64,000 nucleotides of DNA from Selaginella moellendorffii (lineage: Eukaryota; Plantae; Lycopodiophyta): NCBI RefSeq assembly GCF_000143415.4, contig NW_003314282.1:759872-823871 (forward strand), read 5' to 3'. Position 1 is the stretch's first letter. Every line of letters starts with the position of its first letter. Positions 50,831 to 64,000 of this stretch are shown one piece after another. The translations under genes were made by a program, and so were the position numbers. Below the pieces are notes generated by a model. It made no database searches and was not told where the DNA came from. It was given only the letters and a program-made list of their open reading frames with translations.

Positions 50831-52025
50831 TCCTCTTCCTCTTCTTCTTTGGCCAGTTTTTCCATCTGTTCTTCGTGCATCTCAGGTGTCCTGGAAAACC
50901 AAAAGACAGATTCTCAAGTGAGGAACCAAACAACTAGTCTACTTACCGATCATGGATGAACATCGCCAACAGCCTGTACATGTCCCTCGTTTCATCCTCC
51001 CGCCAGCACTCCAAATATTCCAAGTCGCGATCTTCTCCCGCGCTACTGCGGGCGAGCGTGGCGGCAAACTCCCTGCTCGACATCCCTCGGTTGTCAACAT
51101 GCGGGAAGCGCACTCGAGCCATGCGTGCCCAGAAGCACTCCCGCTTGTCGTCTGTGAAATCCGACGGAGCCAGCTCGTACACCCTGTTGCTGGAATGCCT
51201 GAGGAGCGTAGCGTGCACCTGCACAGCCGACTCCTGGAGTAAAACATAAAACGTTGAAGGTAAAGTCGGCCTCTTGGGCAAGACAACACCACCGCCACCG
51301 CCCGATGCGTCCCAGTCTGTTTCATGCAAGAACTCACGCGTCAGCTTGCAACAAAGTTGCAACAAAGGAATTCGATCACACTCACACGACGTTTCCTGCC
51401 CGATCGCCAGCGGCAGAGCAGAGCGGCACAGCCACAGCCTCGCGTCGAGGAGGGCAAGAGCGACGTTCTCGCCGTGCGTGAGAAAGGGACACGGAGAGAT
51501 TATCCGGGAGAGGATCCCGTCGGGCTCGAGAGCGCGAGAGGCATCACCTGTTTTAACAAGACCGAGCTCAGAACAAAGAAACATGCGCAGATCAATCCTA
51601 CCCGAATCCAAAGGGAGGTTCAGCAAAGTGGTGGCGAAGTTCCCGACGGGGATTTCTCGGAGCAAAAAATCGAGCTCTCCATACCACTCGGCCAACTCAG
51701 GATGTTCTCCCTTGAACGCTGCGTAAGGGGTCCTCCGCTCCAGCGACTATAAACGTCGTGGGTGAGATAAACAAGAAAAAGAGAGATTGGAGCTAACCTC
51801 GGGGTAGTCCGTGCAACGCTCGGCTGCGTAGCGCTTGTCATACCACGATTTCACGATCTCGTACAGCAAGCCTCCCTCCCTAAAGTGCAAGCAATCCCGC
51901 CGGAACGCGGTGATCACCCTCCTCATCTCGAGCGTCTCGCCAACAGCTTCCTTGAGAGCCACAGGAACTTGGGCGCCCTTTCTGGCAAACGCTCCATCCG
52001 CCATAGCCTGCTCCATAGCCGCCAT
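50803..52025 (-). CDS. Protein of unknown function, 3 exons, poly-Glu C-terminus
   Basis: MAAMEQAMADG..TDYPE|SLERRTPY..LAEWYGELDF...MFIHDR|TPEMHEEQMEKLAKEEEEEEEEEEEVGR* splices in frame across two GT-AG introns. Telo-box AAACCCTA beside the start. Confidence 0.7.
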
Positions 52026-52508
52026 AAACCCTAAAAATCCGCCCATTTGCCCATTTTATAGGGCTCTTGACAAGAATATTCGTTAAGGGGAAAAAATATT
52101 CTCTAGGGTTTTAGAATGTTGGCGCGCATTCCAAGCATGCTAGGGTTCTTGAGCGCCGGGGAATAGATTCTCAAGCACAGGGTTCCCTCGATGCAATCGC
52201 GCCTCCGTCCTGACAGAATAGGGGATTTTTGTACCGGTGTCGCCAATATTTCCGCTGTCGGGCAGCGATGTTTCTTCTGGCGCCGCTGCCATCGATGCGA
52301 GTATCCCCGCTCAAGCCAAGAGGTGTGATTGCGTGATCCAAAATGCGTGTCTTGATCGACAGTTTCAGGAGAGCGAGCGATACCGACAAGGGCTATCCAT
52401 GGAAAACTCAGGCCAACAGATACGACACGATGGTCACAAGTCAAGCGTTGGCAGAGTTTTCGCAGTTAAGATCGGCCCTCGGCAGCTCCAGGACGAAGAA
52501 AGGAGAAA

Positions 52509-55500
52509 ATGTGGCTGCTCTCGCTTGCTCTGGTGCTGCTGCTCCAGCTCTCCGCGGCGCAGAACGTTTCCTATGATCATCGATCGCTTATACTGAATGG
52601 GAAACGGAGGATTCTTCTGTCTGGATCCGTGCACTATCCTCGAGCGACACCCGAGGTCTGCCAGCTCTTTGCTATTGCTAAATAGATTTGCCAAGCTCAC
52701 TTCTTCTTTTGATACATCAGATGTGGCCGGGGATCATCCAGAAGGCAAAGGAAGGTGGGCTGGATGTGATTGAAACGTATGTGTTCTGGGATCGGCATGA
52801 ACCATCTCCAGGACAGGTGAGCTTTTCAATCGTTTTTTCTTGTCAAGTTTTCTCCTAAGTTGTTCTCTTTTGTTCATGTAGTACTACTTTGAGGGTCGAT
52901 ACGACTTGGTGAAATTCGTGAAACTCGTGCAGCAAGCTGGGCTTCTTATGAATCTCCGGATCGGCCCATACGTTTGTGCAGAATGGAACCTCGGGTAAGT
53001 TGTAACTGAGCATTTCGTTTTCTTTTTCGACTTCAGTGAGAAGAATTGCTGTGTGAACAGAGGATTTCCCATCTGGCTAAGGGACATTCCCCATATTGTC
53101 TTCAGGACAGACAACGAGCCTTTCAAAGTAAATTTCGCTTCGTTCTTTGCTAACCTGACTGATGCTACCTGGTACCTTACAGAAATATATGCAGAGTTTC
53201 TTGACAAAGATCGTAAACATGATGAAAGAAGAAAACTTGTTTGCTTCCCAAGGCGGTCCTATAATTCTAGCTCAGGTTGAAAACGAATACGGCAACGTTG
53301 ATTCGCATTATGGGGAGGCTGGTGTGAGGTACATAAACTGGGCAGCTGAGATGGCTCAAGCTCAAAACACAGGCGTCCCTTGGATAATGTGTGCGCAGTC
53401 TAAAGTTCCCGAGTACATCGTAATTTTTAGCAACTTGATCTTGTCTCTTACATTCTAAGTATCTTGCTTGTGTGCAGATTGACACCTGCAATGGAATGTA
53501 TTGCGACGGCTGGAATCCAATTCTATACAAGAAGCCAACTATGTGGACTGAAAGCTACACTGGCTGGTAGAGCACAGCTCATTCTATTCCTTAGTAGCTG
53601 TTTGCATGTCCGTCTTTTGGTTGTAGGTTCACATATTATGGATGGCCAATTCCGCACAGGCCTGTGGAGGACATTGCCTTCGCAGTTGCACGATTTTTTG
53701 AACGCGGGGGTAGCTTCCACAACTATTACATGGTCTGGGTATTGATATCATCGTCTCGAAACTGATCGTGCTAAATGCGTGTAGTATTTTGGCGGAACAA
53801 ATTTTGGGAGGACGTCAGGCGGTCCATATGTTGCAAGTAGCTATGACTACGACGCACCTTTAGATGAATATGGTAAAAGTCATGCTCAAGTTGAGTTGCT
53901 TAAAAGTTTTTGTTTTGAGTTGAAGGCATGCAGCATCTTCCTAAGTGGGGACACTTGAAGGACCTTCACGAGACGCTAAAACTGGGCGAAGAAGTTATTT
54001 TGTCAAGCGAAGGACAGCATAGTGAACTCGGTCCAAATCAAGAGGTTAATTCTCAGTTTGAATGTTCGTGTTTCTTATCAAGCTAAGTTGCAGGCCCATG
54101 TCTATTCATATGGAAACGGATGTGTGGCATTCCTTGCCAACGTCGACAGTATGAATGACACAGTTGTAGAGTTTAGAAACGTTTCCTACTCCCTGCCAGC
54201 TTGGTCTGTGAGCATTCTTCTTGATTGCAAAACCGTAGCATTCAACTCCGCAAAGGTTCGTTCTGCCTTCTTTTTGTTACTTCTGTTCTTTTCCTCTAAG
54301 GTACTCGCAGGTGAAATCGCAATCTGCGGTTGTGAGCATGAGTCCTTCAAAATCGACCTTATCATGGACATCATTCGATGAACCTGTAGGAATCTCGGGA
54401 TCAAGTTTCAAAGCTAAGCAGCTACTGGAGCAAATGGAGACGACTAAAGACACGAGTGATTATCTGTGGTACACGACAAGGTATGTTGCTATCTTTCTGT
54501 AAAAGCATGTGTATATGGAAGTTTGCAGCGTCGAGGCGACGGGAACTGGTTCAACATGGCTTTCCATTGAAAGTATGAGGGACGTTGTCCACATTTTTGT
54601 GAATGGACAGTTCCAAAGCTCTTGGCATACTAGTAAGTCGGTTCTATATAATTCGGTGGAGGCACCTATTACGCTAGCTCCTGGTTCAAATACAATTGCA
54701 CTACTGAGCGCTACGGTTGGCCTTCAAGTAAGCTACCATTTCCTAACTCTTTTTGGATGCTAAAGTTTGGATGCTTTCAAGAATTTTGGAGCCTTTATCG
54801 AGACTTGGAGTGCGGGCCTGAGCGGTTCGCTGATACTCAAGGGCCTTCCGGGTGGAGACCAGAATTTATCAAAGCAAGAGTGGACATACCAGGTTTTTTG
54901 AACTATTACCTTCCATTCTATCTAACCGCAATAACAGGTCGGTCTCAAAGGCGAAGATCTTAAACTTTTCACAGTGGAAGGCTCTCGTAGCGTAAACTGG
55001 TCAGCGGTCTCGACAGAAAAGCCTCTGACATGGTACATGGTAAGTATAAGAGCATTGAAGTTTTTGGTGGAAGCTTTCTTCAATATGTTTTTTTCCTTAA
55101 TTTCAGACAGAATTCGATGCTCCACCCGGAGATGATCCGGTTGCATTGGATTTGGCGAGCATGGGTAAAGGTCAAGCGTGGGTGAACGGACAGAGCATTG
55201 GACGATACTGGCCAGCATATAAAGCTGCGGACTCGGTCTGCCCCGAGAGCTGTGACTATCGTGGAAGCTACGATCAAAACAAATGCCTAACAGGCTGCGG
55301 ACAGTCATCTCAGCGCTGGTAACAAAGTGCTCCTTGCCATCCTTTCATTCCTTGTAAACCTTTCTGGTTTTCCAGGTATCACGTCCCTCGTTCTTGGATG
55401 AAGCCGAGAGGAAATCTTCTGGTCCTTTTCGAAGAAACCGGTGGTGATCCATCGAGCATAGACTTCGTGACGAGATCCACGAACGTGATCTGCGCACGAG

Positions 55501-55826
55501 TTTATGAGTCCCATCCAGCTTCCGTGAAGCTCTGGTGCCCGGGTGAAAAGCAAGTCATCTCCCAGATACGTTTCGCCAGCTTGGGAAATCCCGAAGGAAG
55601 TTGCGGGAGTTTCAAGGAAGGAAGCTGTCACACGAACGATCTATCCAACACAGTGGAGAAGGTTTGCTCATTTACTTTCGCTGTTTCATAGCTAAGTTTT
55701 CTCTCATTTGGATTCCAGGCTTGCGTTGGACAGAGAAGCTGCAGCTTGGCTCCCGACTTCACCATTTCCGCGTGTCCCGGGGTCCGAGAAAAGTTCTTGG
55801 CAGTAGAAGCTCTTTGCTCTTCTTAA
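52509..55826 (+). CDS. BGAL: Beta-galactosidase, GH35, with C-terminal galactose-binding (SUEL) lectin domain
   Basis: Signal [116 protein letters not shown]. Confidence 0.95.
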
Positions 55827-55908
55827 TGGTCTATGCGTTTTTTTTCTTCCTCTATAGATTCAAGTCTTTCTTCGCGTACTAATGACAGTTAGCTTTTCTT
55901 TTTCTTTG

Positions 55909-58083
55909 TCAATGAAGGAAATCATCGGCACTCTCTGCTAGATGAGCAACAAATCGATTAAACGTTCTCACCACCCATCCCGGCGATGGTGGCGACGGAA
56001 GAGAAGCTGGCTCCGTAAGAGAAGAACTGTAGCCCTCCGGGTACGTGATCAGGATCTCGTGGTCCCAGTAGCTTCTTCCATCGCAGCTCGAGGCAGCAGC
56101 AGCAGCGTTCGATTGTAGAATCGAGTTTCCGAGCAAAACTCCTGCCAGCACTCCCAGCGCAAACACCATCGGATTCATCAGACCCCAGTGCAAGCTCGAC
56201 AGGAGATCGTTTCCAGTGCGGCGGTACTTTTTCCTCTCGATCAGTTCCACCTGTGCCGGATCTCCAAACCACCGCTCCTTCGACTTCCAGCTGCTCGACG
56301 AGAGAACCAGGCAGCCGTTGGGCATTATCCTGGTGATCCGGCCGCTCCTCTCCTTGCACGGCCACTCAAACCGCGGACTTCCCCGAGCACAGCAGCTTAG
56401 CCGCACCATCTGCCCGACTCTCAGCGGCTGGATCTTCGCGAGCCTGGTTGGAACTCCAGTCCAGAGCATGTCGCAGCCAACGAACGCGACTTGCAGCTCT
56501 CCATCGTGTTGGATGCTGTGAACGATCCCGACGCAGGACGGCCGACTGCCCGAGTAGTGGTGATCCTCGTTTGTCAACCTGTGAACCCAGTCCCCGACGG
56601 TGATTCCAAACGAGACCAGCTCCAGCTCGTCCGGGCTCCCTTCCCAGAGGTCCTGCGAGCCGCAAAACTTCACCCGGACCACGATCTCTTCCCTGTCAAC
56701 TTCCACCACCACGCCCTCGGCGTTGTGCGGCGTGTAGCGCCAGCAGCCGCGCCTCGCCGACTTCTTCACTGTGACGTGATCTCCGGCTTGCAGCGGGTTC
56801 TTCCACAGGCAGAGCTTCCTCGATTCGCAGGAATAGGATTGGATCTGCTGTCTCGGCAGGCGCACTTGGACGAAGGAATCGTCTTCTTCGATCACCAGCC
56901 CGATCTTCGTCTGCTTGCTCGGCTCGTCGTAGACGTGAATCCAGTCGCCTCGTTTCAAACCAGGACTGCAACGACACTTGTTAGCAAAGGTGGTGTGTAA
57001 AGAACAAGTTTTACCTCGTCAAAGTCGCCAGGATTTGGCGGAAGTCTGGCCGATTCCTGTAGTCATACTCGAAGCAATCTTCCAAGACCCGTTGTATCGC
57101 TGCTGGTAACTCGGACGGGACGCTGGGCCTGTCACCTTTCAAAACCACCAGGTTGTAAATCTCTTGGGGCGTCTTGTCTTCCCACGGCCTCTTCCCTGTG
57201 ACCATCTCCACAATGCTGCACGCGTATCCCCACGAGTCCGTCTCGAACGCCAGCGGACCCCTCGTCTCCACGCTCCACTGCTCTGGCGCCATGTAGTTTG
57301 GAGTTCCGATGTAGAACTTGAAATCCAGGAAGCTCTTGCATCCGGAGAAGAGCAGCGGGAGCGCGTGGTCTCCGACGAAGGCGTCGTTGCTCGAGTCGAG
57401 GAGAAAGTTGCAAGGCTTTAAGTTGAGCGAGAGAACGCCGCTAGAATGGAGCTCGAGGACACCCTTGGCTATGTCCGTGGCATACCTGTGTAAAGTTCGT
57501 GAGAGAGAGCGAAGTGTCAAGGGTTTCCAACGCCAGAAAAGAGAAAGAGGCTCTCTTTCTCTTTCAAATCTAGGAGAAAGCTTACTTGAGAGCTTCCGAG
57601 AGCGAGAGCCTGTTGTCCGGGAGATGAGCCAATCGACCACCAACGGAGCCTTCATACAGAGGTGATAGAATGCAAACCTGGAAGAGCACGATAGAGAAGA
57701 GAGCTTATATGGAAAGATCTTAAAGAAACACACACCTTGCCATTCTTCATCGAAACCCCGAGAGGGACGCTCACGCCCTTGAGGCCCTGGCACGCGAAGA
57801 GCGCGGCGTCGAATCGCCTCAACACCGTCTCGATCATCTCCGAGCCGACGAGCGGCAGCATTTTCACAGCGACCTGGCGCTCCTGGGATTGAAATCTGGC
57901 GCTGGCGAGAAACACATCCCCAAACTGGCCACGCCCGATCCGATACAAGTGCCGGACATCGCCGGGGTTGATCCACGACGATGGATCGCAGGCGCTGGAC
58001 GCCGCCGCGCCTCCGCCGCCAGGAGATTCCCCGAAATACGAGCTCCGGCAGAGCTCGCATTCGTAGTCGCTGGCGCATCCCAT
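55909..58083 (-). CDS. KEG-related kinase with C-terminal HERC2-like/SH3-like repeats (At4g32250-like)
   Basis: IGRGQFGDV, VAVKML, LNLKPCNFLL, GTPNYMAPEQW, ETDSWG, then repeats GDWIHV / GDHVTV / VGDWV / VGQMVRL..PRFEWP. Confidence 0.85.
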
Positions 58084-58502
58084 GGCGCAAAACCAAAACC
58101 TAGGTAGGGAGGAATGCTTAAAAGCCAACAAAACTGGGCAAAGAGTTCCAACTTTCCTGAACAACAGAAAACAGCCTCGCCACGTCATAACACCGTTAAA
58201 ATAGTTGAAATTGGAAGCCCTAGTTACAGATTTAACTAGATCTAACAAACTGAATATTTTAATGGTCAAGACATTTTTTAATGACTGTTGTACATTTTTG
58301 GTACATGCTTCATATTCTTATAGTCTTTGCAGTAACAACTTCCACTTGTTACATGCATATATTTCTAACTTCTAACTAAAGTAATTGTTATTTTAAGAGA
58401 AATAGTTTTATATTTTAACAAGTCCAAAATAGTAAACTGTTGTTTGATATGTTCCACGGCTATTAATACAGATTAGCTGTAAGTTTAACTCTAAAAATCA
58501 TA

Positions 58503-59270
58503 ATGATTAATAGCTAATATGTTTTAGTTTTGCTAATAATATTTAGTGACAACATCTTAGCAGCTCGTATTGTGAGAGATAATCGTAGAAATCTCTCATT
58601 ATCTACAAAAAGAAACATTTTAAGAGCAATAAGAGAGGCTATAGATCGAATAGATGTTGATGTTCCATTTTACACTAGATACAAGAGTTTATCACAATTA
58701 TGGTATTAGGATATTATTATCTACTATGACTTCTGAATTGTATGTTCCTAACTATCTACGTCTCTCCAAATTACACTATTCCATGGGAAGGTTTGACATT
58801 AAGAGCTGAATTTGATAGAATTTGTAATAATTACATCCGTATTGATCATGAGATGATTAACTATGGGATTACAGAATATTATTTAGGCATGCATTAAAAG
58901 TACATCCAATTTTTCATACTTTTCTAATTTATTAAGTGGAGAATTTCTTCAATCTTTAAATAAACAGTACTCATTACATGTTCATTTAAATTGTAATGTT
59001 GTATTATATAAAGAAACTATTACCATATGGTAGACTAATACAGAAAATAAAATAAATAATTTTTATTTAACAATGAAAATTGATGGTAAATTAGTTTTGT
59101 ATGATGAATTTCATAATGTTATATGGTCATATAATATTTATTAGAAAAATATTTGGAAACCAATAGCATTATATGTTGAAGATACTGGTCATATAAGTGT
59201 TTCTAATATAGTTGAACAAACTTCTATATGGAGAGTTCCAAAAAATAATAAAAAATTCACATATATCTAG
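58503..59270 (+). pseudogene. AT-rich decayed gene ending in a bulb-type (GNA/B-lectin) domain
   Basis: 58923-59270 reads SNLLSGEFLQSLNKQYSLHVHLNCNVVLY..IW*TNT..LTMKIDGKLVLYDEFHNVIWS..LYVEDTGH..IW, i.e. three degenerate QxDxNxVxY..W repeats. A signal-like hydrophobic start begins at 58503. Confidence 0.7.
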
Positions 59271-61229
59271 GTTTTCACTAATTATAATTAGTAATATTTA
59301 TGAATATAAAAATAAGGGTGGTTTTAATAATATATTGAACGTTTATCAATTAGTAAAATATTATAAAGCTACTTAAATAAATTTTAATACAAGAAGGTTA
59401 AACATATAGTATAAATATTGTGATTGAAAGTGTTCTTGATGGATAGTACATTGTACTTTCTAATGTTCTTTTGCATATTTCTTTTCTAAATAACATAAAT
59501 AAAAACCTTGAATTAATAAAGTTATGAGTTCATGCTTATAAAGTTAGAATGAACTCATAAAAGTAATAAAGACTAATTAAATAATCCATTATAAAATTGT
59601 AAAAATGAAATTATTAATAAATAATTAATAAGAATATTTATTCCATATTTAATATATTAGTTAAATTGTATCATAAATCAAAAACCTTATTATGGTTAAA
59701 TTATATTTATTTATTTTGCAGATTCTAGAGCACTAGGCAGTTTATCAAGACTAAATTTAAATTTTTATTTATGTCTATACTTAATAAGAAATATGTTTAT
59801 TCTTTAATTAGATAGTATTTTTTATTATATTTAATAAGTTGTATTATAAGAAATAAGAGAAGCTTAAATATTTTTGGTTTGCTTAAGCAAACCTGTAGGG
59901 GGGCTGAGATGGTAGTTAATATTCCTAGAATATGCTTAGATATTCTAGGATATTCTACCATCTAACTGTTGTTATTCATTTACATTTATATTTTATTTAT
60001 AATTTATAAACATGTTTATAATTTATAGACTTGCTTAAACTCTTTGAAGTATATTCTTTTTATTCTACCATCTAATGGTTAAAATTAATCTTGTGTTTAT
60101 AAATTATAAACATGTTTATAATATTTTTATTTGATCAATTGGATTAATAAGTAGAAATAACACTACTATTAATCAAACCAAACATTGCTACATGTGACAC
60201 GTAGCAAATTATTTAATGTTTACATATAAAATACTTAGCTAATCAAATTGAGAAAATAATATATAAAAAGGATTATCATTTAAGTTAAAAAATTTAACAA
60301 TTTTAAAATTTGCATATTTATCAGGAATATACTATAAACTCACATACATTCAAAGATTATGTATAGTTTTTATAAAGTACCAACAATTATGTCAGTATTT
60401 GATGAATATATTTTATATGAATGTTCAGAAGGAATAGTACACCATAACATAATAGTATGTAAAAAAATTAATAAGTTAATATATTATTTGTTCAATATTT
60501 AATTTTTACTCTTCAAAATATATAAATTTTCATTTTTTTGATATTTTTGTTCCATAATTTTTTAAAATTGTTTATATTCTCAACATAAGCAAATAAATAT
60601 GATTGAGAATTATGATCATAATACATATCTTAATTTCAATCAATATTGTTAATGCATAATATTATTAAATTTATATTATGTGAGATAAAAAGTTTAATTA
60701 TACAATAATTATTATCAATTTCAACTGATATTTAGATTCTATTTAAAAAATATATAAAAGTGATATTTATGACGATTTTTATACTTGTGTGTAACTTTCA
60801 TAGTAGTAATATTAAACAATTCTTTTGATACTTACAAAAATTTGGATGTTTGTATAATTTATTTTGTTTTTATATACTTTTTTTTCATTTGCAGGTATAA
60901 AATATATATTCATGAGGAGATAACAAAATTAAATATTGTTTCTATAGAAAAGGTTATACATGCCAATTGTTAAGCCTTATTTAAATGTATGTATTTTTAT
61001 TACACTGTTAGGTGAAGTGGTATAACAAAGTGAAGCTAAAAGAGCAAAATAATATTACAATCATCTCATAAATATTTATATGAAAGACATTTTAAATTTT
61101 TTAAACTAGTTTCTTTAAGTACCAAAAAAAATTAAGATCTTTGATGACTTTTACCATTTTTCTATTGTAAGATAATTATGTGCATACATCATCCATAACA
61201 CGAGAGACATGTGGGATGACAACTTCTAC

Positions 61230-61236
61230 TATAAAT
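61230..61236 (+). promoter_or_regulatory. TATA box of the Cys-rich peptide gene
   Basis: TATAAAT about 70 bp upstream of the ATG at 61301; AATAAA at about 61850. Confidence 0.55.
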
Positions 61237-61300
61237 TGGCCACACCAAAGGGCATTTGTATGAAGTATTGCTTCTATTATTTCTGTTTGCTTCAATAGTC

Positions 61301-61791
61301 ATGGCTCTTGTTCGAGTTTCTTGCATCTTTCTGCTGCCATTGCTTTTGCTCGCAATTGCCAATGCTGCTAAAGAAGGTATCGATTTGATTGCATAATGTT
61401 TCAGCTAAATATCAGTCTTGTGTCCATAGCAACGGTGGTTTTGGAAGGGGTGGATGTTATGCATGATCCACGATATTTGGCTACTATCCTGGGAAACGAA
61501 GGCCTAGGTGCTGCATTCACCCATGATGAGATTTTTCTTGTTATTTATTTTTATGTCTTTTTTTGTGCAGGACTAACAAGTGTTCTGGGCGACACTTATT
61601 GTTGCCTCAAGAACGGCTATGGGTGCATGCAAAATTGCGACTCATCCAAGAACTACTCATGCTGCCTCAAGAATGGATATGGCTGCACGTGGATGTGCGA
61701 GAATGGTGTGGAGCACTACTGCTGTGAGAAGAATGGCTATGGCTGCACCAAGATGTGTCCCAAGTCTACAGTCACGTTTGGCAACCTGTAA
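61301..61791 (+). CDS. Secreted precursor with three tandem 4-Cys peptide repeats (3 exons)
   Basis: MALVRVSCIFLLPLLLLAIANAAKE|ATVVLEGVDVMHDPRYLATILGNEGL|GLTSVLGDTY-CCLKNGYGCMQNC-DSSKNYS-CCLKNGYGCTWMC-ENGVEHY-CCEKNGYGCTKMC-PKSTVTFGNL*. Phase-1 introns at 61377-61429 and 61508-61570. Confidence 0.85.
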
Positions 61792-62984
61792 AATGGATAA
61801 TGTGTGGATGTGTATGCGTGCCGCTATAGATCTATGGCGGCCAGCTTCAAATAAAAACTGAGTGGCTCACTCTCTGACTTTCTTTTTAGAGTCTTGAGCT
61901 TAATTCATCCTCTTTCTTCTTTCAAGATTGCACATCCTCACTGTCTTGTCGCGTTTTTCCACCACAATGCCCGTGTGTGCACTGCGGACAAACCCAGTGA
62001 TCTTGCTTTTAGAAGGCTGTGATGATCAAAGTAGCCGAGGGTGATTTCCAGGTTCTGTGAGTGGCTGTCCCGGTTCCAAAATCAGCATTGCCTGTGATTT
62101 CTTGGATTTTCTTTAATGAATATACAAAAGATCAAAGATGGCAGCAGCTTTAGCGAAAGACGATGGTCAAGCATGTATAAAGAAAGAAGCCTCTTCATAG
62201 CTCCTTTTAGATCTGAAATCAGGAAACAAGGAGCACCGCCCCCGGACATTGGTCGTGATTCGCATTGTCTGCAAGGGGATCACCTCGAGACGATGCAGCG
62301 AAATACGAGCGTTTGATCGTCCAGTGCGTTGCTGCTACCTCGCATGAGGAGGAAGGCCAGAGACTGTCGAGTTCTTGTCACAACAACTTGCACCTACATG
62401 TCTTTGGCCTGACATGGAAGTTATGATACTTAAAACTCATGCATATCCATACGGATATTCGCCTAATTGCTGATGCATTCATGGCAACCCATACCGACCT
62501 GAAGCCGCTTGGCCACAGTGGCCGAAGGAGACAATAAATCCAAGAACCGACTCTGTCATATGGATGCACTTTCAAACTTCGTTCTTGTATAAGAAAAGAG
62601 AAAAATCAAAACTAACAGAAGGACTTTGGCAGAGTCGCTGCTCTTAAATTTTATTTTGTATGTTGAATGCTTTTCATCTTTATTCATCAATTGTGTGGAC
62701 TCTCAGCTATTTCTGTACTTTATGAGCTAGAACCATGACACCCGTTTGAATTCCCGGAGAACCCCAAAACAAGCAACTAGTTGCGGAATTGGGCGGCACG
62801 GGCTGGCTCCGGCTCGGGCGGCGCCGTGGGTTGCTCCGGCTCCTGCGGTGGCGGAGGATCTGGCAGCTCCTCAACTTCACTGCCAGACACTTTCGCCGCT
62901 TGCCGGTCGCCTCTACACCTCGTTGGCCTTGAAGTCGCCGGTGATGATTAGCGTTGAGCAGCAGCCGTCAAGTAGTTTCTCCAC

Positions 62985-63425
62985 TTTGCTCACGCCTACA
63001 AAGTAGTTCCATCTCATGTGACGATCAAAAAGCGAATTTTTTCGTGGCTTCCTACATGGGACCTCGCTGCCATATCATCTGGAGGGAAATTTGTATGTGG
63101 TCTGGAATGGCAATCGTTTCCCAATATGATGGGGCAATCTCGAAACGTTTTTTAAATGTTAGCTATATAGTCATAAGCAGTGGTGCAAGCCATGCGTGTG
63201 CAATACGAAGCTACGACAATAGAGGGGTCTACAAGCCTTCGTGTTGATCTCATCTGGAAGTGTTTTTTCTTGTGGCCTCACTATAGATGGAGCAACAGTC
63301 TGCTGGGGAGAAGTGCCAGATGCAATTTTGAAACCATTAAATTTTCAGAAATGGCTTTGTTTGCTGCAGTGCATGTAATATGTGGAATCACAGCTCAAGC
63401 AGGAGAAAGTCTCTGCTCGGGAGGT
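62985..63425 (+). pseudogene. CRINKLY4-type (crinkly/RCC1-like repeat) ectodomain relic
   Basis: Across frames: ISSGGKFVCGL, ISSGASHACAI, SSGSVFSCGL..GATVCWG and HVICGI..GESLC. Confidence 0.65.
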
Positions 63426-64000
63426 AAAGAGACCAATCCCAATGCTGCAATTCCTCCTCTTGGTCTCAAGTAGCTTACATAACTGGAGGATTCTTCCATA
63501 CTTGCTGCGTGCAGACAATCACCAAGTCATATGGTTGGGATTGCGCAACTTGAGTGTGTCCCCTTACCACTGAATATACTAGCTATATTTTAATATAGTC
63601 GCTTTATTATTATTATAAAAAATATATTTGGTTTAGAATGAGCACATGAAAGAAATCACACACAAAATCTATCCTGCTCTTTTTACAATGTCTTTGAGCT
63701 TGATGTATATGCAATTATAATGTTAGTTGAGTCAATTTTGTACTGGTTCAAATACAATAAAATGATGTGCTTGCAACTCTAGATTTGTTGATTTTGTACT
63801 CTTTTCTGGAAATCAAGATAATTTCTTGTATGTTTTTCCAATGTTATTCAGGAAAACATCCTTTTTATCCCCACTGTTAATATTCAGAATTTTTATGTGC
63901 ATCAGCAACATACTTTGCAACTTTTTCTGTATGTGAGAAAGAAGGTGCCAGCTAGTAGTCGAGGAAATTTTTAAATTTTTTTTTTTTTTTTTTTCTTTTT

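What the first reader, a model, noticed from the sequence alone, without database searches (positions are those of the whole stretch)
61301..61791. Multi-core cysteine-rich peptide precursor with three CC-x-K-NGYG-C-x3-C units
Seen: signal-peptide exon, a pro-region exon, then three 13-aa cores (CCLKNGYGCMQNC, CCLKNGYGCTWMC, CCEKNGYGCTKMC) separated by 7-aa linkers, with TATA and AATAAA signals. The ORF track misses the true start at 61301. KNGYGC is invariant despite synonymous changes (AAC GGC TAT GGG / AAT GGA TAT GGC / AAT GGC TAT GGC), which suggests selection on the protein. Known: the CC-C-C framework in a multi-peptide precursor recalls Impatiens Ib-AMPs (CC-x8-C-x3-C) and alpha-conotoxin spacing, and NG favours a beta-hairpin turn. 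Inference: a new family of two-disulfide hairpin peptides, perhaps released at linker Asn/Asp residues (KN-Y, EN-G) by asparaginyl endopeptidase. A single 12-Cys three-fold mini-domain is the alternative.
Basis: partly seen in the sequence, partly recalled or inferred. Interest (0 to 1): 0.8.

Follow-up and report, generated by a model that had tools for sequence, protein, structure and literature searches.

The report
Spikemoss secreted cysteine hairpin-repeat protein gene
This is a real, transcribed three-exon gene of the spikemoss Selaginella moellendorffii for a small secreted protein made of three 20-residue, four-cysteine hairpin units; it belongs to an uncharacterised family seen only in this species, and the units more likely stay together as one small protein than get cut into separate peptides.

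Summary
The window is Selaginella moellendorffii scaffold GL377586.1. The gene has exons 61301-61376, 61430-61507 and 61571-61791. RNA-seq junction reads confirm both GT..AG introns, and a poly(A) tail starts near 61869. The product is identical to the database protein SELMODRAFT_442049 (124 aa).

It has a signal peptide, a variable pro-region and three CC-x6-C-x3-C units joined by 7-residue linkers. I found 16 relatives, all in this species, with three or four units. All 42 intact internal linkers are exactly 7 residues.

There was no Pfam, PDB-sequence or fold match, so UniRef's "Granulins domain" label could not be reproduced. dN/dS in the cysteine domain is 0.12-0.23.

The window's copy is weakly expressed, at about 1-3% of the paralogue at locus B. 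Its allele on the other haplotype has an 18-bp deletion that removes one cysteine.

Twenty of 43 linkers lack Asn and five lack both Asn and Asp, while Asn inside the core is nearly invariant. I favour an uncut tandem-hairpin protein, probably for defence, at about 0.6, against about 0.25 for a multi-peptide precursor.

The scan met this family before on other DNA of the same genome (s1-402708, s1-432129, s1-431157, s1-410796, s1-419144).

The parts
61230..61236 (+). TATA-like box (TATAAAT) upstream of the transcript
   Evidence: Located. RNA coverage begins in the bin 61271-61304, and a contig starts at 61299. The other haplotype has TATAAGT here. Function as a promoter element is inferred.
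61301..61376 (+). Exon 1 coding part: start codon and signal peptide (MALVRVSCIFLLPLLLLAIANA|AKE). It ends in phase 1.
   Evidence: Translation. Identical to P0001 residues 1-25. The donor at 61376/61377 is seen in spliced reads. The signal peptide is read from the sequence (basic n-region, Leu-rich core, ANA-A); no predictor was run.
61377..61429 (+). Intron 1 (53 nt, GT..AG)
   Evidence: Joint 'skips 53, GT..AG (cut +2)' in one X2 contig and in 20 X24 reads from 18 start points.
61430..61507 (+). Exon 2: pro-region (TVVLEGVDVMHDPRYLATILGNEGL), the fastest-evolving part of the protein
   Evidence: Translation. Alignments A1 and A2 show it is variable, and it is missing from some gene models of paralogues. 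RNA depth is 11-38 in X24.
61508..61570 (+). Intron 2 (63 nt, GT..AG)
   Evidence: Joint 'skips 63, GT..AG (cut +2)' in one X2 contig, 25 X24 reads and 4 X23 reads.
61571..61791 (+). Exon 3 coding part: the whole cysteine-rich domain (12 Cys) and a 10-residue tail, with the stop codon at 61789-61791
   Evidence: Translation. Equals P0001 residues 52-124. In every paralogue examined the domain starts at this exon boundary.
61600..61638 (+). Unit 1 core, CCLKNGYGCMQNC
   Evidence: Predicted hairpin strands are residues 4-9 and 12-17 of the domain model.
61660..61698 (+). Unit 2 core, CCLKNGYGCTWMC. The 18 bp at 61678-61695 are deleted in the allele on the other haplotype.
   Evidence: The deletion is seen in the DNA alignment with L010 and in proteins P0012 and P0013.
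61720..61758 (+). Unit 3 core, CCEKNGYGCTKMC, followed by the family-wide P-K
61792..61869 (+). 3' untranslated region with AATAAA at 61850-61855 and a poly(A) addition site near 61869
   Evidence: AATAAA located. An X2 contig ends with 26 A after 61869, and RNA depth falls to zero beyond about 61882.

Best explanation
The locus is an intact, transcribed gene of Selaginella moellendorffii (SELMODRAFT_442049, LOC9641423).

Shown: it is one member of a family of at least 16 proteins, found only in this species.

Proposed mechanism:
1. The 22-residue signal peptide sends the product into the ER (inferred from the sequence).
2. A poorly conserved pro-region of about 35 residues follows. It may be removed (inferred).
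3. The last exon encodes a 64-67-residue, roughly 7-kDa domain of three 20-residue units, each Y-x-CC-x-K-N-G-[YF]-G-C-x3-C-[DE].
4. Each unit forms a beta-hairpin turning at N-G (predicted with moderate confidence).
5. The four cysteines per unit give six disulfides in all. Their connectivity is unknown.

I think the three hairpins stay joined as one compact, protease-resistant extracellular mini-protein. The unit number changes in evolution by exact one-period gains or losses (three or four units).

The likeliest role is apoplastic defence or binding, as for other lineage-specific plant cysteine-rich proteins. That role is inference only.

The window's copy is a minor, weakly expressed paralogue. 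The locus-B paralogue carries most of the expression.
For: Gene model and transcription:
- Splice joints, poly(A) tail and strand-specific coverage support the model.
- The product is identical to P0001.

Family:
- The exhaustive phmmer search found only S. moellendorffii proteins plus one spurious bacterial hit.
- The profile search found 16 proteins, all from this species.
- Members have 3 or 4 units.

Selection:
- dN/dS in the cysteine domain is 0.12-0.23 for A/B and C1/C2.
- The units inside the gene are saturated at synonymous sites, yet CCxKNGYGC is kept.

Kept intact rather than cut:
- 42 of 42 intact internal linkers are exactly 7 residues. Position 1 is always D or E, and position 6 or 7 is Tyr.
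- In the A/B clade the two linkers are identical in all three proteins, while the C-x3-C loop residues vary.
- No processing motif is shared by the linkers.
- The AF2 domain model (best model pLDDT 72, pTM 0.48) has strands that run from the linker Tyr to the residue after the last Cys. Only 4-5 residues are left between hairpins.

Expression:
- Exon 1-2 depth is 15-38 and there are 20-25 junction reads in X24.
- About 1-3% of exon-3 reads carry the window's own bases. The rest match the locus-B alleles.
Against: - There is no protein-level evidence of any kind.
- The structure model is shallow: about 8 distinct sequences. Only one of five models passed pLDDT 60, and the full-length run gave pLDDT 44.
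- The model had no fold match at all. The best Z was 2.1, unusually low, which may mean the hairpins are not packed together.
- Unit number varies. An allele with unit 2 damaged exists. The D alleles differ mostly in linkers, with dN/dS about 1.1. These three facts fit independent units as well as, or better than, one domain.
- The domain is only weakly basic (pI about 8, net +1.7), so a classical cationic antimicrobial action is not indicated.
- Absence from other species may reflect what the collections hold.
Confidence: 0.6

Rival explanations
1. Multi-core precursor. The protein is cut in the linkers, and three separate two-disulfide hairpin peptides of about 13-20 residues are the active products, by analogy with the Impatiens Ib-AMP polyprotein.
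For: - It is a tandem array of near-identical four-Cys units behind a signal peptide and pro-region.
- Unit number varies between 3 and 4 among paralogues, through loss of different units in different clades.
- The other-haplotype allele loses one cysteine of unit 2 but leaves units 1 and 3 untouched.
- The D alleles keep their cores while the linkers diverge.
- Each unit is predicted to be a self-contained hairpin, and the model matches no compact fold.
- The window's own linkers do contain Asn (DSSKN-YS, EN-GVEHY).
Against: - 20 of 43 linkers lack Asn and 5 lack both Asn and Asp. Only 7 have a dibasic pair. Asn inside the core is nearly invariant and would itself be a target for asparaginyl endopeptidase.
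- Linker length is fixed at 7. Conserved acidic and aromatic linker positions are predicted to lie within the hairpin strands.
- In the A/B clade the linkers are more conserved than the core loops.
- Ib-AMP peptides have CC-x8-C-x3-C spacing and are described as basic 20-residue peptides (PMC4695807; spacing from my own knowledge of Ib-AMP1). These cores carry only about +0.7 charge each.
Confidence: 0.25
2. Divergent granulin module, as the UniRef name 'Granulins domain-containing protein' implies. On this reading the 12 cysteines form a granulin-type stack of hairpins homologous to animal and plant granulins.
For: - UniRef gives this name to P0001-P0003, P0005, P0012 and P0016.
- There is a local likeness: Y-x-CC ... 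G-x-G-C hairpins, and 12 cysteines in the three-unit members.
- Serial beta-hairpins are predicted.
Against: - No Pfam Granulin match, even at E<=10, in ten family members.
- No granulin among PDB sequence hits for a single member or for the family profile.
- No granulin in three fold searches.
- The cysteine pattern is CC, C, C repeated, not the granulin pattern C, C, CC, CC, CC, CC, C, C (my own knowledge).
- Family members have 12 or 16 cysteines depending on unit number.
- Near-identical alleles (P0010, P0004) are not given the name, so the underlying signature match is borderline.
- PMC4527844 states that plant granulin modules always sit as a single module at the C-terminus of a cysteine protease. 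That is not the case here.
Confidence: 0.05
3. The window's copy is a decaying, functionally redundant duplicate, even though the family as a whole is functional.
For: - Its expression is about 1-3% of the locus-B paralogue's in the two RNA runs.
- The allele on the other haplotype has an 18-bp deletion that removes a cysteine, and a changed TATA box.
Against: - The window's allele has an intact frame, intact splice sites and all 12 cysteines.
- It is transcribed and correctly spliced.
- dN/dS against locus B is 0.12-0.20.
- Only two raw-read RNA samples, of unknown tissue, were examined.
Confidence: 0.1

Closest known systems
Ib-AMP polyprotein of Impatiens balsamina (Tailor et al. 1997, as summarised in PMC4695807)
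   Same: Both are secreted plant precursors with several tandem four-cysteine units sharing a CC ... C-x3-C motif, with two disulfides per unit.
   Different: - Ib-AMP spacing is CC-x8-C-x3-C; here it is x6 or x7.
- Ib-AMPs are described as basic peptides; these cores are nearly neutral.
- Ib-AMP units are separated by long propeptide spacers (my own knowledge) and have been purified as free 20-mers. Here the linkers are 7 conserved residues and nothing is known at the protein level.
- No sequence relationship was found.
Granulin/epithelin module (Pfam PF00396, SMART SM00277)
   Same: Both are small, secreted, disulfide-rich and built of serial beta-hairpins. There are 12 cysteines in the three-unit members, and a local Y-x-CC ... 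G-C likeness. UniRef uses this name.
   Different: - The cysteine spacing differs.
- The cysteine number is variable (12 or 16).
- There is no HMM, PDB-sequence or fold match.
- The domain is not attached to a cysteine protease, as plant granulins are (PMC4527844).
Thionins (Pfam PF00321)
   Same: Both are plant secreted cysteine-rich defence peptides with an N-terminal CC followed by C-x3-C (CC-x7-C-x3-C in type I thionins; sequences quoted in PMC8279376).
   Different: - Thionins are a single 45-residue domain with 6-8 cysteines, a helix-hairpin fold and a C-terminal acidic prodomain.
- There is no Pfam match here.
- The architecture here is a hairpin repeat.
Other lineage-specific secreted cysteine-rich repeat proteins of S. 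moellendorffii noted by this scan (14-residue Trp/Cys hairpin-repeat peptides: s1-363762, s1-431098 and others)
   Same: Same genome. Both have a signal peptide followed by tandem disulfide-stapled hairpin units of variable copy number, are multigene, transcribed and of unknown function (unchecked AI notes).
   Different: The unit differs: a 20-residue period with four Cys here, against a 14-residue period with two Cys and Trp-rich. This family is annotated in GenBank and is nearly neutral, not strongly basic.

Membership tests
Granulin (PF00396 / SM00277) | Canonical cysteine pattern C, C, CC, CC, CC, CC, C, C, with CC doublets 5-8 residues apart (12 Cys; 14 in plants) | tested here: not met
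   The pattern here is CC-x6-C-x3-C-x7 repeated, with CC doublets 18 residues apart, and 12 or 16 Cys depending on unit number. The granulin pattern is from my own knowledge. PMC4527844 confirms the definition by 12 cysteines and the plant variant with two extra cysteines.
Granulin (PF00396 / SM00277) | Significant match to the family HMM or to solved granulin sequences | tested here: not met
   There was no Pfam hit at E<=10 for P0001-P0005, P0009-P0011 and two translated loci. No granulin appeared among PDB sequences at E<=10, for a single sequence or for the profile. The SMART model could not be run.
Granulin (PF00396 / SM00277) | In plants, a single module fused to the C-terminus of a papain-like cysteine protease | tested here: not met
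   The protein has 124 residues: signal peptide, pro-region and repeat domain only. The rule is from PMC4527844.
Granulin (PF00396 / SM00277) | Stack of beta-hairpins pinned by a ladder of inter-hairpin disulfides | tested here: inconclusive
   AF2 predicts three hairpins, but no granulin structure was matched. Model coordinates and disulfide pairing were not available to me.
Ib-AMP family | Basic 20-residue peptides with CC-x8-C-x3-C and CysI-III, CysII-IV bonds | tested here: not met
   Spacing is x6 (x7 in some paralogues), and core charge is about +0.7. Disulfide pairing is not testable here. Ib-AMP features are from PMC4695807 and my own knowledge.
Ib-AMP family | Single peptides released from the polyprotein and detectable as free molecules | not testable with these tools
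   No proteomic or peptidomic data were found.
Ib-AMP family | Sequence relationship to the Impatiens precursor | tested here: inconclusive
   The exhaustive and profile searches returned no non-Selaginella plant protein. Whether the Impatiens precursor is in those collections was not verified.
Thionin (PF00321) | Match to the thionin HMM; a single 6-8-Cys domain with a C-terminal acidic prodomain | tested here: not met
   No Pfam match. The architecture is N-terminal pro-region plus a 3-4-unit repeat.
Bowman-Birk inhibitor (PF00228), reported in S. moellendorffii by James et al. 2017 | Match to the BBI HMM; a reactive loop of the C-T-[KR]-S-x-P-P-x-C type | tested here: not met
   No Pfam match, and no such loop in the sequence. 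The paper itself was not held. The loop motif is from my own knowledge.
Plant secreted cysteine-rich peptide/protein (generic class) | N-terminal signal peptide, product under about 160 residues, cysteine-rich C-terminal mature region, multigene and lineage-specific | tested here: met
   The protein has 124 residues, with 12 Cys in the last 64. Sixteen paralogous proteins are in one species. The signal peptide is judged by eye from the sequence.

The most novel reading that the evidence does not exclude
The family is a lycophyte invention of a polyprotein that is cut into free 13-20-residue, two-disulfide beta-hairpin peptides. It would be convergent with the Impatiens Ib-AMPs but use a different, non-asparaginyl-endopeptidase cleavage rule at the conserved C-[DE] and Y-x-CC borders. 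That would give a new plant peptide scaffold and a new processing site.
Probability: 0.2. Interest if true: 0.6.

Novelty: new variant of a known kind. Interest (0 to 1): 0.4.

Why it matters
Plants hold many lineage-specific secreted cysteine-rich proteins, but very few are known from lycophytes. This family has a cysteine framework and a 20-residue hairpin repeat that match no curated family or solved fold, and its locus-B paralogue is very abundantly transcribed.

It offers a small disulfide-rich scaffold for structural and peptide-engineering work. It is also a clean case of repeat-number evolution by exact one-unit gains and losses. A simple mass-spectrometry experiment could settle whether the product is one domain or several peptides.

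It also shows that the public "Granulins domain" label on these proteins is probably wrong. The gene itself is already annotated as hypothetical, and a new lineage-specific cysteine-rich family is not surprising in kind, so the interest is moderate.

Tried and rejected
- Pfam on ten family members at E<=10 gave nothing. The only rows were far below cut-off: Prot_inhib_II at 12.4 bits against a cut-off of 22.3, and CC4_RECK at 7 bits. I treat both as chance.
- PDB sequence searches, single sequence and profile, gave only chance rows at E 2-10.
- ESM Atlas by features gave no usable hit.
- AF2 on the full-length protein gave pLDDT 44 and was unusable.
- AF2 on the domain alone, with alignment A3, gave pLDDT 72 for one model only. 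A3 contains overlapping parts of the same four-unit proteins, so its real depth is about 8 sequences.
- Fold searches of that model (Foldseek PDB, VIA wide, VIA second look, Atlas by shape) gave no meaningful match.
- The window holds no second copy of the gene.
- Literature searches by locus tags, accessions, the peptide motif, and Selaginella with cysteine-rich or peptidomics terms found nothing on this family.
- The Selaginella 'thionins' of PMC8279376 are unrelated sequences.
- James et al. 2017 on Selaginella Bowman-Birk inhibitors was not held.
- P0007, a 650-aa bacterial repeat protein at E 5e-4, is a spurious match to the pro-region string and was discarded.
Exon 3 was searched by reference, and afterwards I used the database protein P0001, which is that spliced product, by its id.

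Full report
**Identity of the DNA**

The translated last exon (window:61573-61788) matched three proteins of Selaginella moellendorffii, the best at 100% identity: P0001, SELMODRAFT_442049, 124 aa. The locus fetched for P0001 (L002, GenBank scaffold GL377586.1:811172-831662) is identical to window 51301-64000. The window is therefore spikemoss nuclear DNA.

**Gene model**

- ATG at 61301.
- Exon 1: 61301-61376. Intron 1: 61377-61429.
- Exon 2: 61430-61507. Intron 2: 61508-61570.
- Exon 3: 61571-61791, with the stop codon at 61789-61791.
- Both introns are GT..AG and phase 1.

RNA evidence comes:
- One contig of run X2 spans exon 1, exon 2 and the start of exon 3 without a mismatch.
- Raw stranded reads of X24 show 20 reads (intron 1) and 25 reads (intron 2) across the joints, from 18 and 22 different start points.
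- Coverage lies on the strand expected for a + strand RNA.
- A contig ends in 26 A after 61869, 14 nt past the AATAAA at 61850-61855.
- TATAAA lies at 61230, and coverage starts between 61271 and 61300.

**How strongly is this copy expressed?**

Exon 3 has a depth of 2,100-2,800 in the two raw-read runs. However, 97-99% of those reads carry the bases of the paralogue at locus B, for example 61585 C>G in 1437 of 1479 X24 reads. Their upstream loose end reads M-T-T-M-V-E-N-R-V-L, which is the P0003 pro-region.

Exons 1 and 2 of the window's gene are too different from locus B to collect its reads. Their depth is 15-38 in X24 and 1-5 in X23. The window's gene is therefore transcribed and correctly spliced, at roughly 1-3% of the locus-B level in these samples. 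The tissue of these samples is unknown.

**The family**

The exhaustive phmmer search of 1.84 billion cluster representatives gave four real clusters, all S. moellendorffii, plus one spurious bacterial protein. A profile search of 5.8 billion proteins gave 16 proteins, all from S. moellendorffii.

From the fetched loci:
- Locus A is the window. Its other-haplotype allele is L010, which has the same GH35 and kinase neighbours.
- Locus B is P0002/P0003. These are alleles, because they share identical flanking genes. Locus B lies 480 kb from A on the same scaffold.
- P0016 is present on two haplotype scaffolds.
- P0018 lies on a further scaffold; its locus was not fetched.
- A group of about ten proteins maps to scaffold GL377567.1; of these, the loci at 1.60 Mb (L004) and 1.69 Mb (L006) were fetched and read.
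- Locus D is P0005/P0011 and P0010.

Every member has a signal peptide, a variable pro-region, and then three or four units in a single last exon. The domain always starts at that exon's boundary.

**Anatomy of the repeat**

- The period is 20 residues, or 21 where one residue is inserted before the third Cys.
- Cys positions 1, 2, 9 and 13 are invariant.
- Core position 5 is Asn in 39 of 43 distinct cores, and position 8 is Gly in 39 of 43.
- Position 4 is mostly Lys or Arg, and position 7 is most often aromatic (Phe or Tyr in 33 of 43).
- All 42 intact internal linkers are exactly 7 residues. Position 1 is always Asp or Glu. Position 6 is Tyr in 22 of 28 distinct linkers, and otherwise His or Gln followed by Tyr.
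- The last unit is always followed by Pro-Lys.

Three-unit genes arose at least twice. In the A/B clade the missing unit lies among the first two of the four-unit relatives P0016 and P0018. In the C clade (P0017, P0019-P0021) the unit carrying the E-x-N-V-x-Y-F linker is missing. Each time exactly one period is lost.

**Selection**

The three units inside the window's gene are 64-77% identical at the DNA level. They are near saturation at synonymous sites (pS 0.5-1.0), while the nine codons CCxKNGYGC have pN 0-0.11.

Between paralogues, dN/dS in the cysteine domain is 0.12 (A v B1), 0.20 (A v B2), 0.17 (B1 v B2) and 0.23 (C1 v C2). It is about 1.1 between the D alleles, whose changes sit mostly in the linkers. 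The signal and pro-region diverge much faster than the domain.

**Comparison with known families**

- Pfam gives nothing at E<=10 for ten members.
- PDB sequences give nothing, with a single sequence or with the family profile.
- The UniRef name "Granulins domain-containing protein" is attached to only some alleles. P0005 has it, while its allele P0010 has not. This indicates a borderline automatic signature.
- The cysteine pattern is not the granulin one, and the number of cysteines varies with unit number.
- Plant granulin modules are described as single modules at the C-terminus of cysteine proteases (PMC4527844).
- Ib-AMPs share the CC and C-x3-C motif and the polyprotein idea (PMC4695807), but differ in spacing, charge and spacer length.
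- Thionin and Bowman-Birk membership also fail. No paper in the held library mentions the genes or the motif.

**Structure**

The full-length prediction was useless, with pLDDT 44.

The domain alone, with an alignment of family domains, gave one model at pLDDT 72 and pTM 0.48. The other four models scored 37-59. This model has three beta-hairpins: strands 4-9/12-17, 23-29/32-38 and 43-49/52-58.

No library gave a fold match: Foldseek best E 1.6, VIA best Z 2.1, Atlas TM at most 0.40. The hairpin unit is therefore supported at moderate confidence. Packing of the hairpins and the disulfide pairing remain unknown.

**One protein or three peptides?**

Evidence for cutting:
- Unit number varies.
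- The deletion allele leaves two units whole.
- The D alleles diverge mainly in the linkers.
- The model is not compact.

Evidence against cutting:
- Linker length is invariant.
- The conserved acidic and aromatic linker residues lie within the predicted strands.
- In the A/B clade the linkers are more conserved than the core loops.
- No shared cleavage motif exists. Twenty of 43 linkers lack Asn, five lack Asn and Asp, and only seven have a dibasic pair.
- A near-invariant Asn sits inside each core, where asparaginyl endopeptidase would attack as readily as in the linker.

I put the uncut tandem-hairpin protein at about 0.6 and the multi-core precursor at about 0.25. The function is inferred only by analogy with other secreted, lineage-specific, multigene, highly expressed plant cysteine-rich proteins: extracellular defence or binding. 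The near-neutral charge (pI about 8, net +1.7) argues against a classical cationic membrane-active peptide.

**The other allele**

On the second haplotype (L010) the gene has an 18-bp in-frame deletion, corresponding to window 61678-61695. It removes Y-G-C-T-W-M and so the third cysteine of unit 2, leaving 11 cysteines. The TATA box there is changed to TATAAGT. Together with the low expression, this suggests relaxed constraint on locus A in the sequenced plant, although the window's allele is intact.

**Earlier scan notes**

The same family was noted on other pieces of this genome: s1-402708, s1-432129, s1-431157, s1-410796 and s1-419144. Two follow-ups reached a similar reading: hairpin-repeat proteins, species-restricted, and probably one domain. 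These are unchecked AI notes. I reached my reading from my own calls and do not count them as independent support.

**Verdict**

This is a real gene and a real, uncharacterised, species-restricted cysteine-rich repeat family. It is a new variant of a known kind, of moderate interest.

Noticed in passing
L010:10001-10600 (GL377596.1, other haplotype), corresponding to window 61201-61900: The allele of the window's gene on the second haplotype has an 18-bp in-frame deletion (window 61678-61695), which removes YGCTWM and one cysteine of unit 2. It also has a 12-bp deletion in intron 2 and TATAAAT changed to TATAAGT. The 200-aa model P0012 built on it reads through into downstream sequence, which the poly(A) site at 61869 does not support.
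   Followed up: yes
L006:10001-12803 (GL377567.1): The annotated 610-aa 'protein kinase domain-containing' model P0006 is a mis-fusion. Its first ~100 residues are a family member whose real last exon (L006:10338-10604) has four units and its own stop codon.
   Followed up: partly
L006:10053-10604 (+) and L006:21523-22074 (-): There are two identical copies of a four-unit family gene in inverted orientation about 11 kb apart. Each lies next to a copy of an FtsJ/Spb1 methyltransferase gene. This looks like a recent inverted segmental duplication or an assembly artefact.
   Followed up: no
L005 and L007, 10194-10568 (locus D alleles): The two haplotype alleles of the four-unit D gene differ by 14 non-synonymous against fewer than 3 synonymous changes (dN/dS about 1.1). 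Most of the changes lie in the 7-residue linkers and tail, and the cores are almost unchanged.
   Followed up: partly
window 52509-58014: Upstream neighbours, taken from the annotation of the identical locus L002, are a GH35 beta-galactosidase with a SUEL-lectin domain (52509-55826, +) and a protein kinase (55909-58014, -).
   Followed up: no
window 58001-62000: The gene sits in an AT-rich stretch (GC 0.27-0.29, against 0.42-0.58 around it). No gene is annotated for 10 kb downstream in L002.
   Followed up: no
window 61796 (3' UTR): About 100 RNA reads per run continue past 61796 with extra TGTGGATG repeats instead of the window's sequence. This is probably a short repeat-length difference in the 3' UTR of the locus-B paralogue, from which most reads come.
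   Followed up: no
Proteins P0001-P0003, P0005, P0012, P0016 versus P0004, P0010: UniRef names some family members 'Granulins domain-containing protein' and calls near-identical alleles 'Uncharacterized protein'. The label could not be reproduced with Pfam and is probably a borderline automatic signature match.
   Followed up: yes
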